Positions 1 to 7,296 of a stretch of DNA of 64,000 bases are shown in pieces (the stretch's first letter is position 1; every line of letters begins with the position of its first letter). This stretch comes from Pecten maximus (lineage: Eukaryota), in contig NC_047021.1 of NCBI RefSeq assembly GCF_902652985.1, positions 26,226,001 through 26,290,000 on the forward strand, read 5' to 3'. The translations under genes were made by a program, and so were the position numbers. The notes under the pieces are model-generated. The model searched no databases. It saw only the letters and a program-made list of their open reading frames with translations, and was not told where the DNA came from.

Positions 1-915
1 TGTAAAAAATAACAATCTCAATTTGCTCTCCTTTGTAAAACCATTTCTCATTACATTTGACAATTCCACCTCTTCTGAATACAACAATCTTGGTCTTATC
101 CAGGTTTACTTTCATACCATACTTATCACAGAAAGAAGATACACAGTAAATTTGTTTTTGTAACCCAAGCACTGTATCTGCTAGGCTTGCAATTTCATCA
201 GCATATAATAAAGACGTAATGTTGTGAACATTTTCATTAACAAAAACACCTCTACATCCATGATTGTCCATTGATTCAAGCAGTTCATTTAAGAACAACA
301 CAAAAAGTAGCGGACTGATCATACAGCCTTGTCTTGTACCCACAGAGCAGTTGAAAAATTCAGATAACATGAGTTTGTCTACTTTCACACAGGATTTGAA
401 CTGAGAGTACATAGATGATATAACAAGAAAAAATCTACCTTTGACATTATTTTTCAAAAGGATATATCTTAATAATGTATGCTGAATACTGTCAAAAGCT
501 TTTGAAAAGTCAATAAAAATACAATATAATCTGCCTTTGCGCTTAGTGACGTACTTTTGTACCATAGCAAATAATGTAAAGATATTGTCAGTAGTACTAT
601 AGCCAGTTCTACATCCAATCTGATTTTCATAAAGTTTGTCATAAACTTCACACCAAAATCTCAATCTGTTATTCAATATCTTAGTAAATATCTTTCCAAT
701 TACTGAAGATAAAGAAATACCCCTATAATTATTTGGATTATGTGTGTCACCCTTCTTATGCAATGGAGTGATTACAGCTTCACACCAAGCTGCTGGAAAT
801 AATCAAGATCCAAGTATAGCATTGAATAACACAGAGAGATATGGTTTCAGGAGTGAATATGCATATTTCGTATGCTCATTCATGATGCCATCAGGACCCG
901 GAGCTTTTAAAACAG
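1..915 (-). mobile_element. Degenerate non-LTR retrotransposon (CR1/L2-like LINE) reverse transcriptase fragment; runs off the window start
   Basis: Minus-strand translation gives RT motifs in order: KAPGPDGIM (~880-910), NYRGISLSSVIGKIF (~690-735), GYSTTDNIF, IFIDFSKAFDSIQH (~479-520), VGTRQGCMISPLLF (~302-343), LYADE (208-194; normally YADD), VNLDKTKIVVF. There is an in-frame TGA at ~805-803. Confidence 0.93.
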
Positions 916-2720
916 TATATTCTGTATCTAGTAATAAAGAGTATATACTGTTTCTAGTATTAAACAATATTTTCTGTATCTAGTATTAAACAGTATATTC
1001 TATATCTAGTAATAAACAGTATATACTGTTTCTAGTATTAAACATTATTTTCTGTATTTAGGATTAAACAGTATATTCTGTATCTAGTAATAAACAGTAT
1101 ATACTGTACCTAGTATTAAACAGTATTACTGTATCTAGTATAAACAGTATATACTGTTTCTAGTATTAAACTGTATATATTGTTTCTAGTATTAAACAGT
1201 ATATACATGTACTGTATCTAGGATTAAACAGTACATTCTGTATCTAGTATTAAACATTATATACTGCTTCTAGTATTAAACTGTATATACATACACTGTA
1301 TCTAGGATTAAACAGTATATTCCGTATCTAGTAATAAACAGTATATAATGTATCTAGTATTAAACAGTATATACTGTATCTAGTAATAAACAGTATATAC
1401 CGTATCTAGTATTAAACAGTATATACAGTATCTAGTATTAAACAGTATATAATGTTTCTAGTAATAAACAGTATATACTGTTTCTAGTATTAAACAGTAA
1501 ATACTGTGTCTATGATTAAACATTATATATTCTGTATCTAGTAATAAACAGTATATACTGTTTCTAGTATTAAACATTATTTTCTGTATCTAGTATTAAA
1601 CAGTATATTCTGTATCTAGTAATAAACAGTATATACTGTTTCCAGTATTAAACATTACTTTCTGTATCTAGGATTAAACAGTATATTCTGTATCTAGTAA
1701 TAAACAGTATATACTGTTTCTAGTATTAAACATTATTTACTTTATCTAGGATTAAACAGTATATTATGTATCTAGTATTAAACATTATATACTGTACCTA
1801 GTTTTAAACAGTATTACTGTATCTAGTATAAACAGTATATACTGTTTCTAGTATTAAACAGTATATACATGTACTGTATCTAGGATTAAACAGTATATTC
1901 CGTTTCTAGTAATAAACAGTATATACTGTTTCTAGTATTAAACATTATTTTCTGTATCTAGGATTAAACAGTACATTCTGTATCTAGTATTAAACAGTAT
2001 ATACTATACCTAGTAGTAAACAGTATTACTGTATCTAGTATAAACAGTATATATTGTTTCTAGTATTAAACTGTATATACTGTTTCTAGTATTAAACAGT
2101 ATATACATGTATTGTATCTAGGATTAAACAGTATATTCCGTATCTAGTAATAAACAGTATATACTGTATCTAGTATTAAACAGTATATACTGTATATAGT
2201 ATTAAACAGTATACACTGTTTCTAGTATTAAACAGTATATACTGTATCTAGTATTAAACAGTACATACTGTATCTAGTATTAAACAGTATATACTGTACC
2301 TAGTATTAAACAGTATATACTGTATCTAGTATTAAACAGTATCTACTGTTTCTAGTATTAAACAGTATATTCTGTATCTAGTATTAAACAGTATATACTG
2401 TATCTAGTATTTAACAGTATATACTGTATCTAGTATTAAACTGCATGTATTGACTTTATCTAGTATTAAACAGTATATACTGTATCTAGTATTAAACAGT
2501 ATATACTGTATCTAGTATTAAACTGCATGTATTGACTTTATCTAGTATTAAACAGTATATACTGTATCTAGTATTAAACAGTATATACTGTATCTAGTAT
2601 TAAACTGCATGTATTGACTTTATCTAGTATTAGACAACATATACATTGTACTTATTCTGGTATTAAACAATATATACTGTATCTACAATTTAACCGCATA
2701 TATTATATCTAGCATTAAAC
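910..2720. repeat. 26-bp minisatellite (AAACAGTATATACTGTATCTAGTATT)n, about 68 copies, with an internal palindrome ACAGTATATACTGT
   Basis: Period 26 read directly (AAACAGT at 2282, 2308, 2334). The array begins right at the LINE fragment boundary. Confidence 0.95.
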
Positions 2721-3470: not shown

Positions 3471-3687
3471 TACAAATATTGACAAGGTAAAAAGTATCTT
3501 ATCGCTTTGTCGCCATGCTTTTATAACTGGTAATGCGCCACCATGCATCCTTAAAAATAAATAACATGAGTTTGAAAATTTGTAAACGATTCAGAATTCC
3601 TCGGCCTTAATTGCAACATTTGGGGTCTTAAATCTTTCCTTTTTCCGTCACTGCACTGTTTTTTTTCCTCAAAAGGTCTCATTAACA

Positions 3688-3931
3688 CACGTCCTCATAT
3701 GACCCTCACTGTTGGTGTGACCTTAACATCCGTCCTCATATAACCTTGACTGATGGTGGGACATTGACACCGGTCTTCATATGACCCTGGCTGTTGGTGT
3801 CTCCTTGACACCCGTCCTCATATGACCCTGTATGTTTTTGTCTCCTTGACACCTGTCCTCATATAGCCCTGGCTGTTGGTGTCGCCTTGACACCTGTCCT
3901 CATATGACATTGGCTGTTGGTATCGCCTTGA
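3688..3931 (+). repeat. 41-bp minisatellite, 6 copies (GTCCTCATATGACCCTGGCTGTTGGTGTCTCCTTGACACC-like), resembling a mollusc SINE 3' tail
   Basis: Units start at about 3691, 3732, 3773, 3814, 3855 and 3896. The SINE-tail resemblance (..GTCCT..ATGACCCTGGCTGTT..) is from memory. Confidence 0.85.
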
Positions 3932-4112
3932 ATCTTAGGAGGACGAAACAGCTGTATGATGTCCCTATCATCACTGACGAGTCTTAGAAGGACGAAACAG
4001 CTGTATGATGTCCCTATCATCGCTGACGAGTCCTAGAAGGAATGACGAAGCAGTTTTATGATGTCCCTATCATCACTGACGAGTCCTAAAAGGACGAAAC
4101 AGCTGTATGATG
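3932..4112 (+). ncRNA. Tandem array (~3.6 x 49 bp) of minimal hammerhead ribozymes
   Basis: Copy 1: CATCA 3969-73, CTGACGA 3974-80, stem II GTCTT-aga-AGGAC 3981-93, GAAA 3994-97, CAGCTGT-A (GUA triplet ending 4005), TGATG 4006-10. Copy 3 is intact (CTGACGA 4076-82, GTCCT-aaa-AGGAC, GAAA 4096-99, GUA ending 4107, TGATG 4108-12). Copy 2 is degenerate. Copy 0 is 5'-truncated. Confidence 0.85.
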
Positions 4113-4996
4113 CATGCCTATGTAAGTCTATATTCATATATACAATGGTAATACTTGTGCTATTCATCCGTGTATATAATCCGTTGATATTTAAGCTAAC
4201 CCGCATATAAATATCACAAAATACGCGTATCCTATTACAGTAGAGGTAAAATGTGGGAATACCCAATGTGTTGTATGTAGGAGGTAGGGTTAACAAACCG
4301 TACTGAATGTTAGTCTGGCGTTTGTATGGATTAATTCATAGTAATACATTCGAAAAAAATAATTATGCAATTCATTGATTTTGTGCGAGGTACAGTTTCC
4401 ATCAACATCCTGTACAAACCTCCTATAATGTTATTATCACCAAACTTGAATCAACAGCCAATTAATTATAACCTATTGACTTAAAGCGCAACCATGAAAA
4501 TTCACTGAAGTGAATGGACGGTTATCGTATGGTGTTGCCGGCATAGTGGCAGAATAAAACATCTTGGAAATGTTTGCTTCCTGGCATGGTGTCATTATAG
4601 AACCAGTTACTGTGATGTAACCTAACATGTCCGTTACTAGCCTCAAATGATTAAAAAAAGGAATTTAAATAAATTAAACATCAAAGCTGTCTTTTCATTT
4701 GATTGGTTACACACTTGACACTAATGTATTAAAAAGCTGATTCCATGGAGCTAGACCCGGCAGGTAAGAAATGTACATACCGAGATTAGTTCCTAGAATG
4801 TGGGCGTAATAGTCGAGAAGGCAGTATTACGTAATAGTTCAGACCTAAACACCGAAACGCTATATCTAGGCTATCGTGTAGACACTGGTCTCCACTAATC
4901 AGGCTGCGTGTATGGCTGAATCAGCTGTAATGTAACTATAACGGTAAAGTACAAACAATTTTCATTAATAACTCAGAAGTAGACCAGCTACACTTA

Positions 4997-6108: not shown

Positions 6109-7296
6109 CAGAGACATATATACAGAGAGATTGGTAACTCTCTATTTGCCCTTGTGTTAACATAGTGGCCCCTGACCTTCCCACAATCCTTTGCGGTCGC
6201 TCGGTTCAGTCTTCACTTGACGCCATATTAGAGAAATCGTGAAAACCACACACATAATTATCGATAATTTCTATTTGAAATCATCACCAAGATCCAATTA
6301 TGTGCTTTAATTTTATTAATATCAAAGTGCAGAAGTGTCATCAATATGAAATATATCACAATTTGCTGTCCAAGTGTTTGTATTTTGAGTATGAAAGTCA
6401 ACCTCACCGCAGGAAAGATCGGCGGGAATCTCCAATTTTCGAAAAGTCCCTATGGGGTTTTCGAGAATACGGATAAATGACAACAATGTGCATGATAACA
6501 AGATCATTTTCCATAAGTATGATAGTTTTTGGTTAATGTGGTAACTTTTGTAGTGGCCTAGATAAAACGATGTGCTTTTTGTGTGCGTTTAAAATTGACG
6601 ATGTTTTGGTCTGACGTAATGGCTGCTTAATTACAAAACTTGGACATAGGACCCAATGGATTTTCGAAAATACGGATAAATGACAACAATGTGCATGATC
6701 AATAAGACTATATCCCATAAGTATATGGTAAATTTTGGTTAATGTGGTAACTTTTGTAGTGGCCAAAATAAAACGATGTGCTTTTTGTGTGCGTTTAAAA
6801 TTGACGATGTTTTGGTCTGACGTAATGGCGGCTTAATTACAAACTTGGAAATGTCGAATAGGACCCAATGGATTTCCGAAAATACGGATAAATGACAACA
6901 ATGTGCATGATCAATAAGACTATATCCCATAAGTTTGATCGTTTTTGGTTAATGTGGTAACTTTTGTAGTGGCCAAAATAAAACGATATGCTTTTTGTGT
7001 GTATTTAAAATGACGATGTTTTGGTCTGACGTAATGGCGGATTAACCAGAACATGTCGAATAAGTTCCAGTACATCGATACACACATGCGCAAAGCCCGA
7101 TTTACCTGTGCTCGCGTGTGTTTGATAGGGGACAGGGCGCTCTCGATAAGGGATATGCTTGAGTGGTCACGAATAAAGGGAGCCACCACTTGTACGGGAA
7201 AATAGCGATGTTACTTATCTCTGTATATATGTCTCTGATGTTATATACGACAAGGGCAAATAAAGAGTTACCAATCTCTCTGTATATATGTCTCTG
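6109..7296. mobile_element. Non-autonomous TIR element (TIR CAGAGACATATATACAGAGA) with three internal ~200-210-bp tandem repeats and a duplicated right end
   Basis: TIR at 6109-6128 has inverted copies at 7218-7237 and 7277-7296. Internal repeats start at about 6460, 6662 and 6873. Possible 7-bp TSD ATAACAT (6102-08) / ACAACAT (7297-7303). Confidence 0.85.

What the first reader, a model, noticed from the sequence alone, without database searches (positions are those of the whole stretch)
3932..4112. 49-bp minisatellite whose unit is a minimal hammerhead ribozyme, completed by its tandem neighbour
Seen: each unit holds the catalytic core CUGACGA-stem II (5 bp, 3-nt loop)-GAAA, a palindromic stem III (ACAGCTGT), a GUA cleavage triplet and stem I strands CATCA/TGATG, with only 7 further nt (TCCCTAT). 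A single unit has a loopless stem III. In tandem, ACAGCTGT 3948-55 pairs over 8 bp with ACAGCTGT 3997-4004, and TGATG-tccctat-CATCA (3957-73) closes stem I. This gives a complete type III-topology hammerhead cutting after A3956. Established: minimal hammerheads with palindromic stem III act as dimers in Penelope elements, Schistosoma Sm-alpha and metazoan non-LTR retrozymes, whose monomers are typically a few hundred nt. Inference: a transcript could be cut after 3956 and 4005, releasing a 49-nt ribozyme-only monomer that could circularise and resist re-cleavage. That would be an extremely small retrozyme-like unit or a self-cleaving minisatellite.
Basis: partly seen in the sequence, partly recalled or inferred. 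Interest (0 to 1): 0.9.

Follow-up and report, generated by a model that had tools for sequence, protein, structure and literature searches.

The report
Hammerhead-ribozyme minisatellite, worn scallop copy
This is a short, partly worn run of 49-base repeats in which each repeat is one self-cutting "hammerhead" RNA motif; it is one of hundreds of such runs in this (king scallop) genome, a very compact offshoot of a known kind of ribozyme-carrying mobile repeat, and its cutting has not been tested at the bench.

Summary
Window 3936-4112 holds 3.5 copies of a 49-bp unit that is a complete hammerhead motif, and neighbouring units complete a type III fold (Rfam Hammerhead_3, 40.6 bits, below the 48.5 gathering score).

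It is not a local slippage product. The genome holds 3,917 near-consensus units in hundreds of arrays of up to 58 or more units. The scan had already found this family on other pieces of the same genome.

Wherever the flanks are recognisable, the array sits in one fixed phase at the hammerhead position of an old mobile repeat of about 380 bp that normally carries one type I hammerhead. That carrier resembles the 350-390-bp mussel retrozyme monomer in size and layout only.

For the family consensus the cross-unit hammerhead is the minimum-energy fold. For the window copy it is a minor fold (P about 0.02). One of the window's units is damaged, and the array is cut off at its 5' end by an unrelated 41-bp minisatellite.

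Arrays made entirely of dead-core or deleted units show that growth at the DNA level does not need cleavage. No array without a carrier was seen, so a free 49-nt replicon is not supported.

One thing stays unexplained: array units are 3-5 times less diverged than the carriers around them. No RNA data could be obtained.

The parts
3635..3931 (.). 41-bp minisatellite (about 7 units) abutting the hammerhead array. It is a separate genome-wide family, not part of the hammerhead unit. It occupies the place where the carrier's L arm and the first hammerhead half would be.
   Evidence: TRF and the repeat finder. At least 188 matches and 1,137 candidates genome-wide. No significant similarity to the L arm. 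Absent next to hammerhead arrays in the other loci held.
3932..3956 (+). Partial first unit (unit positions 25-49): 3' half of stem II, GAAA, palindrome P1 at 3948-3955, and GUA with the predicted cut after A3956. It has no catalytic core of its own.
   Evidence: Sequence. Unit HMM positions 23-49 at 3930-3956.
3957..4005 (+). Intact 49-nt unit. Stem I hairpin 3957-3973 (5 bp, 7-nt loop), core CUGACGA 3974-3980, stem II 3981-3993, GAA 3994-3996, palindrome P2 3997-4004, A4005. Together with P1 it forms the type III hammerhead that cuts after 3956.
   Evidence: Hammerhead_3 40.6 bits at 3949-4003. Hammerhead fold -15.6 against MFE -17.0 kcal/mol, P 0.02.
4006..4058 (+). Damaged 53-nt unit: A2.1->G (a wobble), a 4-nt insertion in stem II, A15.1->G, and a degenerate palindrome GCAGTTTT at 4050-4057.
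   Evidence: The unit HMM matches only positions 1-36.
4059..4107 (+). Intact 49-nt unit. Core 4076-4082, stem II 4083-4095, GAA 4096-4098, palindrome P4 4099-4106, A4107.
   Evidence: Hammerhead_1 30.9 bits at 4070-4113. Coordinates checked.
4108..4112 (+). TGATG, the 3' strand of stem I of the terminal type I hammerhead. The array ends here in the family's usual phase (...GTATGATG|CA...). The R arm that follows in other loci is not detectable here.
   Evidence: Junction comparison across loci. No R-arm HMM hit in the window.

Best explanation
Window 3932-4112 is a small, 5'-truncated and partly decayed array of a genome-wide 49-bp minisatellite.

The unit is a canonical metazoan type I hammerhead (helix I 5-6 bp, helix II 4-5 bp, helix III 2 bp plus a palindromic AGCU loop) together with the 7 nt that precede it. 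The family arose by tandem duplication of the hammerhead module of an old non-autonomous repeat of about 380 bp (L arm about 200-240 nt, one hammerhead, R arm about 100 nt). That repeat resembles the non-LTR retrozymes of mussels in size and layout.

Shown here:
- the motif;
- the genome-wide arrays;
- the fixed phase inside the carrier;
- that single-hammerhead carriers are the norm.

Shown in silico only: in a transcript of two or more units the 7-nt linker closes helix I and the palindromes of neighbouring units form an 8-bp helix III. This turns a weak type I motif into a stable type III hammerhead that should cut after GUA every 49 nt.

Inferred:
- Arrays grow and are homogenised at the DNA level, regardless of ribozyme integrity.
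- This locus, if transcribed, would be cut mainly after 3956 and only inefficiently elsewhere.
- The array has no demonstrated role for the host.
For: Motif and tandem completion.

Family size: at least 261 BLAST matches and 1,781 candidates; 3,917 near-consensus 37-mers against 0 in the control; arrays of 5-58 units at dozens of loci.

Fixed phase: arrays start ...TCC.TA.CATCA|CTGACGAG and end ...GTATGATG|CAGTTTAATTCA. L-array-R layouts are mapped by HMM.

Single-hammerhead carriers: loci selected through the arms carry mostly 0-1 hammerhead. BLAST alignments run contiguously through L-HHR-R over about 320-370 bp.

Folding: the consensus cross-unit fold is the MFE with P 0.44, against 2e-4 for the monomer, and multi-unit transcripts fold as nested hammerheads.

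DNA-level growth:
- The same core-killing change is fixed in 17/17, 23/23, 18/18 and 11/11 units of single arrays.
- Arrays are built from 39-, 43- and 53-bp variant units, and some show higher-order periods of 97-491 bp.
- Core sites are no better conserved than loops (0.903 against 0.892).

Literature: mussel retrozyme monomers are 350-390 bp, and type I hammerheads lie in tandem repeats of 150-450 bp (PMC7229834). Tandem type I hammerheads fold as dimers through an extended helix III (PMC4209133). Retrozyme consensus lengths of 51-972 bp are reported in bioRxiv 10.64898/2026.07.22.740005.
Against: No copy reaches Rfam's gathering score; the best in the genome is 47.1 bits against 48.5.

There is no compensatory covariation. 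Pairs are kept about as often as independence predicts.

In the window the carrier arms cannot be demonstrated, and the active fold is a minor conformer.

Simple in-situ slippage does not explain why array units (0.04-0.10 from the family consensus, array consensus 0-2 changes) are 3-5 times less diverged than the arms beside them (0.23-0.48). The orphan carrier L002 shows this, and all carriers are only 66-80% alike.

Homology of the carrier to mussel retrozymes or to PLE pLTRs was not tested. Only size and layout agree.
Confidence: 0.72

Rival explanations
1. The 49-nt unit has an RNA life of its own. Array transcripts self-cleave, and monomers or dimers are ligated into circles of 49 or 98 nt. 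A retroelement reverse transcriptase then copies the circles by rolling circle. Priming or recombination at resident hammerheads of old carriers would renew or create arrays in phase.
For: Array units are far younger than their carriers and stay within 0-2 changes of one genome-wide consensus.

The carrier L002 has no sibling arms, yet it holds a 96%-homogeneous array.

Divergence steps down within the first unit at both junctions.

Two 49-mers cofold through the palindrome into the hammerhead fold at -32.9 kcal/mol, and a 49-nt circle rarely adopts the active fold (P 3e-4), so it would persist.

The arrays meet the operational retrozyme definition of the 2026 preprint (at least 2 consecutive units, each with a hammerhead).
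Against: Arrays exist in which every unit has the same dead core, or a deleted stem II (39- and 43-bp units). These cannot have come from a self-cleaved RNA.

Higher-order periods of 97-491 bp point to unequal exchange.

No array without a carrier was seen.

No inter-locus tract exceeds 93.5% identity, so there are no recent transfers in the sample.

There are no RNA data. DNA routes (eccDNA, ectopic conversion) would leave the same traces.
Confidence: 0.12
2. It is a plain DNA minisatellite whose unit happens to descend from a ribozyme. The motif is a relic that does not cleave to any relevant extent in vivo, and the arrays are neutral.
For: Core positions are no better conserved than loops.

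Only 199 of 494 adjacent-unit hammerheads keep the core, and only 126 also keep all stems.

Several arrays are entirely dead.

All copies score below Rfam's gathering score.

The minimal hammerheads of PLEs cleave poorly in vitro (PMC4209133), and the mussel hammerhead is slow (PMC7229834).
Against: The family consensus is a flawless hammerhead whose cross-unit fold is the MFE.

About 3,900 units are within 2 mismatches of it.

Canonical type I hammerheads of this architecture in retrozymes do cleave and give abundant circRNAs in a mussel (PMC7229834).
Confidence: 0.14
3. It is a local replication-slippage product of a single hammerhead at this locus only.
For: The array here is short (3.5 units) and imperfect.
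Against: The same 49-bp period, linker and phase recur at hundreds of loci on all chromosomes. The window units carry the T12 variant that is shared with arrays on other chromosomes.
Confidence: 0.01

Closest known systems
Metazoan non-LTR retrozymes (Cervera & de la Pena 2020, PMC7229834), in particular the Mytilus galloprovincialis repeats of 350-390 bp
   Same: A canonical type I hammerhead with a short palindromic helix III. A low-GC non-coding repeat without LTR, PBS or PPT. The carrier here is about 380 bp, the size of the mussel monomer. The principle is the same: two neighbouring hammerheads are needed for processing.
   Different: In retrozymes the whole monomer of 150-450 bp is the tandem unit, and it is what circularises. 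Here the carrier is mostly dispersed as single copies, and only its 49-bp hammerhead module is repeated, nested inside the carrier. Sequence homology of the carrier to mussel retrozymes was not tested. No circRNA is shown.
Very short non-LTR retrozyme families catalogued in vertebrates (Li, Clavereau & Pollet 2026, bioRxiv 10.64898/2026.07.22.740005; consensus lengths 51-972 bp)
   Same: Tandem repeats whose unit is barely longer than a hammerhead, detected by TRF plus a hammerhead descriptor. The scallop arrays meet that paper's operational definition.
   Different: That paper gives only the length range. It offers no anatomy, no folding, and no carrier or age analysis of the shortest families. 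It sampled vertebrates, three insects and a coral, and no mollusc.
Dimeric (double) hammerheads of tandem repeats: newt satellite 2 and ASBVd (Forster et al. 1988, as cited in PMC4209133), and the minimal hammerheads of Penelope-like elements (PMC4209133)
   Same: An unstable helix III with a palindromic loop, so that two copies pair into an extended helix III to form the active structure.
   Different: Here the two copies are only 7 nt apart. As a result helix I is closed by a hairpin loop and the pair reads as a compact 57-nt type III hammerhead. PLE minimal hammerheads have a long helix II (7-8 bp), a bulged base and no helix III, which this motif does not. No PLE ORF lies near this locus.
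Tandem-repeat-containing mobile elements of bivalves (e.g. DTC84 of Donax trunculus, PMC3879986; abstract only was read)
   Same: Conserved left and right arms flank a central array with a variable number of repeats. High copy number and a dispersed distribution.
   Different: The core repeats there carry no ribozyme. Terminal inverted repeats, a microsatellite and target-site duplications were not found or tested for the scallop carrier.

Membership tests
Hammerhead ribozyme (Rfam clan CL00010) | Conserved core C3-U4-G5-A6-N7-G8-A9 and G12-A13-A14, with a G10.1-C11.1 pair | tested here: met
   Present in units 3957-4005 and 4059-4107 and in the family consensus. The unit 4006-4058 keeps these letters, but its stem II carries a 4-nt insertion.
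Hammerhead ribozyme (Rfam clan CL00010) | A15.1-U16.1 pair and a non-G H17 at the cleavage site, with three helices around the core | tested here: met
   Met for the site after 3956 (P1:P2, adjacent unit) and for the type I motif ending at 4107. Not met for the adjacent-unit hammerhead at 4005 (G15.1), and weakened at 4058.
Hammerhead ribozyme (Rfam clan CL00010) | Score at or above Rfam's gathering threshold | tested here: not met
   Hammerhead_3 scores 40.6 against 48.5, and Hammerhead_1 scores 30.9 against 34. The best copy in the genome scores 47.1. The shortfall lies in the loops and stem II, not in the core.
Hammerhead ribozyme (Rfam clan CL00010) | Site-specific self-cleavage | not testable with these tools
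   Needs in vitro transcription.
Non-LTR retrozyme | Tandem repeats in which each unit carries a type I hammerhead (at least 2 consecutive units) | tested here: met
   This is the operational criterion of bioRxiv 10.64898/2026.07.22.740005.
Non-LTR retrozyme | Monomer of a few hundred bp (150-450 bp) that is itself the mobile and circularising unit | tested here: not met
   The unit is 49 bp. Arrays are always nested in phase inside a carrier of about 380 bp and were never seen without one. A lower bound of 51 bp is reported only as a number in the 2026 preprint.
Non-LTR retrozyme | Expression as linear and circular RNAs of unit length | not testable with these tools
Penelope-like element pLTR hammerhead (min-HHR) | Location in the flanking repeat of an element with an RT/GIY-YIG ORF, and the min-HHR architecture (helix II 7-8 bp, bulged base, no helix III) | tested here: not met
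   No ORF of 110 aa or more within the first 10 kb of the window. The motif has helix II of 4-5 bp and a 2-bp helix III with an AGCU loop, which is the canonical type (PMC4209133). A PLE origin of the carrier was not tested.
Bivalve tandem-repeat-containing MITE-like or Helitron-associated elements | Left arm, central tandem repeats, right arm; plus terminal inverted repeats or Helitron ends, a microsatellite, and target-site duplications | tested here: inconclusive
   The arm-array-arm layout is met. No tail, TIR or TSD was recognised at the termini by eye. No formal search was done.

The most novel reading that the evidence does not exclude
The 49-nt hammerhead units are renewed through RNA. 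Array transcripts self-cleave into 49-nt pieces that form circles of 49 or 98 nt, which would be the smallest natural ribozyme circles. Rolling-circle reverse transcription, primed at the resident hammerheads of old carriers, writes fresh near-consensus arrays back into the genome in phase. This would explain why arrays are 3-5 times younger than the elements that hold them.
Probability: 0.1. Interest if true: 0.85.

Novelty: new variant of a known kind. Interest (0 to 1): 0.42.

Why it matters
If the arrays are transcribed and do cleave, they would yield a ladder of 49-nt RNAs. That unit would be several times smaller than any retrozyme or viroid-like RNA. It would also be a natural example of tandem repetition turning a weak type I hammerhead into a stable type III one.

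The family is abundant (about 3,900 near-consensus units) and is missed by standard Rfam annotation, so it is a practical warning for ribozyme surveys.

The age gap between young arrays and old carriers offers a tractable test case for how dispersed minisatellites stay homogeneous across a genome. The routes to separate are DNA exchange, eccDNA and RNA-mediated renewal.

The copy in this window is itself ordinary: short, truncated and partly dead.

Tried and rejected
- Other collections: exact-pattern scans of metagenome and viral contigs found nothing.
- Carrier arms in the window: the HMMs give only a 2.6-bit L-arm hint at 3567-3629 and no R arm, so carrier membership of this copy rests on the 3' junction phase alone.
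- 41-bp repeat: I considered it a derivative of the L arm. The local alignment score of 16 is no better than shuffles (14.7 +/- 2.3), so I rejected this.
- Arm phylogeny, to test one origin against many origins of array-bearing carriers: an unresolved star with no supported branch.
- Compensatory covariation in stems I-III: none beyond what independence predicts.
- Recent array-to-array transfer: no inter-locus tract above 93.5% identity.
- Recent transposition as the explanation for young arrays: rejected for L002, which has no sibling arms, and unlikely in general, because all carriers are 66-80% alike.
- The generic CTGANGA...GAAAC pattern is not significant on its own in 64 kb (3 hits against 0.66 expected). 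Significance comes from the full motif.

Full report
**1. The observation**

The sequence at 3932-4112 is as described. TRF reports a 49-bp period, 3.5 copies and 85% matches at 3936-4112.

Cut at the GUA triplets, the array consists of:
- a partial unit at 3932-3956;
- an intact unit at 3957-4005;
- a 53-nt unit at 4006-4058;
- an intact unit at 4059-4107;
- TGATG at 4108-4112.

At gathering thresholds Rfam reports only a tRNA in the whole window. With permissive filters the best matches in 3850-4200 are:
- Hammerhead_1 at 4070-4113: 30.9 bits, E 6.4e-6.

Both lie under the gathering scores of 48.5 and 34, so routine annotation would miss them.

**2. Audit of the window's hammerheads**

Only the hammerhead that cuts after A3956 is fully intact in the adjacent-unit (type III) form. 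It uses palindrome 3948-3955, the helix I hairpin at 3957-3973, the core at 3974-3980, helix II at 3981-3993, GAA at 3994-3996 and palindrome 3997-4004.

The next unit has a 4-nt insertion in helix II and A15.1->G. The site at 4058 has C15.2 opposite U16.2.

A cut after 4005 is still conceivable in two ways:
- the core of the last unit pairs 4099-4106 with 3997-4004, with P of those helices about 0.003;
- the weak type I monomer fold forms.

For the intact window hammerhead the active helices have P about 0.02 (fold -15.6 against MFE -17.0 kcal/mol). The window variant (TAT instead of TAA in the linker) shortens helix I to 5 bp, and loop 1 competes for the 3' strand of helix II.

**3. Not a local product**

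The 181-bp array finds at least 261 matches (1,781 first-look candidates) on most chromosomes, with kilobase arrays.

TRF on the fetched loci shows 49-bp arrays of 5 to 58 units. Some have higher-order periods of 97-491 bp, and some are built from variant units of 39, 43 or 53 bp.

The 37-nt stretch from the core to the 3' strand of helix I occurs 3,917 times with up to 2 mismatches (2,057 forward, 1,860 reverse). The reversed control gives 0.

The genome has 918,306,378 bases in 3,983 contigs. Earlier agents of this scan call it king scallop. That matches what I recall of the Pecten maximus assembly, which is from memory and not verified.

The same family was reported before by this scan on other pieces of this genome.

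**4. The unit**

I extracted 632 ungapped 49-nt units. Their consensus differs from window:3957-4005 at two positions (A, not T, at unit position 12; C, not T, at position 28).

The consensus gives helix I of 6 bp with a 5-nt loop, helix II of 4-5 bp, and the ACAGCUGU palindrome.

Read as a single motif, this is the canonical metazoan type I hammerhead as defined in PMC4209133: helix I 6 bp, helix II 4 bp, and helix III 1-2 bp capped by a small palindromic loop (here AGCU).

For the consensus, the cross-unit type III fold is the MFE (-19.6 kcal/mol, P of the exact helices 0.44). The lone type I monomer almost never adopts the active fold (P 2e-4). Transcripts of 2-6 units fold into nested or alternating hammerheads.

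The principle that tandem type I hammerheads act through an extended helix III is established (PMC4209133, Fig. 1A, and references there). What is particular here is the 7-nt spacing, which closes helix I into a hairpin.

**5. The carrier**

Array boundaries are in one phase at nearly all loci. Arrays begin ...TCC.TA.CATCA|CTGACGAG and end ...CAGCTGTATGATG|CAGTTTAATTCA.

The flanks are divergent but homologous. The L arm is about 200 nt (about 240 with a further shared 5' motif), and the R arm is about 100 nt, ending near ...TTTTGTACAATCC.

Loci recovered through the arms, which are not selected for arrays, mostly carry 0-1 hammerhead, and a few carry 2, 3, 7 or many.

A near-consensus single-hammerhead carrier (L069) finds 643 candidates. 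The alignments run straight through L-HHR-R over 320-370 bp at 66-80% identity.

A single type I hammerhead in an element of about 380 bp is therefore the ancestral and usual state. The 49-bp unit is that hammerhead plus the 7 nt before it.

The size and layout match the 350-390-bp retrozyme monomers of the mussel (PMC7229834). Homology was not tested.

In the window the arms are not demonstrable. The 3' junction is in the family phase. The 5' side is cut mid-unit by a 41-bp minisatellite, which is a separate genome-wide family.

**6. How arrays grow**

Conservation is flat along the unit: core 0.903, non-core 0.888, loops 0.892.

Stems are paired about as often as independence predicts.

Of 494 adjacent-unit hammerheads, 199 keep the core and 126 also keep all stems.

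Several arrays have the same inactivating change in every unit (17/17, 23/23, 18/18, 11/11). Others are built from units with a deleted helix II.

Array growth and homogenisation therefore do not depend on cleavage. No array without a carrier was seen. This argues against a free 49-nt replicon.

**7. An unexplained age gap**

Divergence from consensus is:
- R arms: 0.23;
- L arms: 0.29 overall, and up to 0.48 in loci selected for their arrays;
- interior array units: 0.075;
- edge units: 0.11;
- the hammerheads of 1-2-copy carriers: 0.13-0.24, as decayed as their arms.

Array consensus sequences differ from the family consensus at 0-8 of 49 sites, mostly 0-2.

L002 has arms at 0.48 and 0.23 and no sibling arm in the genome. 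Yet it holds a 10-unit array that is 96% homogeneous and one change from the family consensus.

No carriers are young. Divergence steps down from about 0.33 in the outermost 12 nt to 0.13-0.14 in the first unit and 0.06-0.09 further in.

Neutral in-situ amplification or concerted evolution predicts that an array consensus drifts as fast as its flanks, which would be about 11 of 49 sites. It does not.

BLAST ascertainment cannot account for this, given about 3,900 near-consensus units.

Candidate explanations:
- exchange or reinsertion between arrays at the DNA level (ectopic conversion, eccDNA);
- RNA-mediated renewal primed at resident hammerheads;
- heterogeneity of the arms before insertion, as seen in mussel retrozyme RNAs (PMC7229834);
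- faster decay next to minisatellites.

I found no recently shared tracts between loci (maximum 93.5% identity). The arm tree is an unresolved star. This point nuances the earlier agents' 'ordinary DNA duplication' verdict without overturning it.

**8. The released RNA**

A 49-nt product folds with helices I and II plus a CUG/CAG pairing that sequesters part of the core.

As a circle, the active type I helices have P about 3e-4, so resistance to re-cleavage is thermodynamically plausible.

Two 49-mers cofold through the palindrome into the hammerhead fold at -32.9 kcal/mol.

All of this is inference. No RNA data could be obtained.

**9. Comparison and verdict**

The closest known systems are:
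- the non-LTR retrozymes (PMC7229834);
- the very short retrozyme families listed, without analysis, in a 2026 preprint, with consensus lengths from 51 bp (bioRxiv 10.64898/2026.07.22.740005);
- dimeric hammerheads of satellites and PLEs (PMC4209133);
- tandem-repeat-bearing mobile elements of bivalves (PMC3879986).

I found no paper describing a hammerhead satellite in scallops.

The finding is a real but worn and truncated member of an abundant family. That family is a compact architectural variant of a known kind. Its activity is untested, and the age gap is the one point worth following.

**10. Surroundings**

The first 10 kb of the window has no ORF of 110 aa or more. It is rich in unrelated minisatellites: a 26-bp unit x 68 at 910-2720, and a 206-bp unit x 2.8 at 6458-7045. 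GC is 0.24-0.47.

Noticed in passing
window 3635-3931: A 41-bp minisatellite that is itself a genome-wide family (at least 188 matches, 1,137 candidates, kilobase arrays on many chromosomes). Here it directly abuts the hammerhead array and cuts it mid-unit. It was not seen next to hammerhead arrays at the other loci held.
   Followed up: partly
window 910-2720: A large 26-bp minisatellite (68 copies, 82% matches) 1.2 kb upstream. Many hammerhead loci likewise have unrelated minisatellites (periods 17-67 bp) within 1.5 kb. I did not test whether this exceeds the genome's background.
   Followed up: no
window 29260-29377 (- strand): A tRNA gene with a 53-nt intron in the anticodon loop (Rfam tRNA, 33.1 bits). 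It was the only Rfam match over the gathering score in the window.
   Followed up: no
L025:1409-2562, L030:1109-2494, L046:1500-3053: Three loci where two hammerhead arrays meet head to head in inverted orientation, with no L arm between them and R arms on the outside where present. These are palindromic array pairs.
   Followed up: no
L035:868-1909, L039:847-1109, L020:673-1901: Arrays built from variant units of 43 bp (helix II deleted), 39 bp and 53 bp (4-nt duplication in helix II). Whole arrays have been amplified from structurally dead units.
   Followed up: partly
L002 (G000:C18:16972244-16972730) and flanks: A 96%-homogeneous 10-unit array one change from the family consensus, inside a carrier whose arms are 23-48% diverged and have no sibling in the genome. 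This is the clearest case of the age gap between array and carrier.
   Followed up: partly
window 6458-7045: A 206-bp tandem repeat (2.8 copies, 91% matches) of unknown nature.
   Followed up: no
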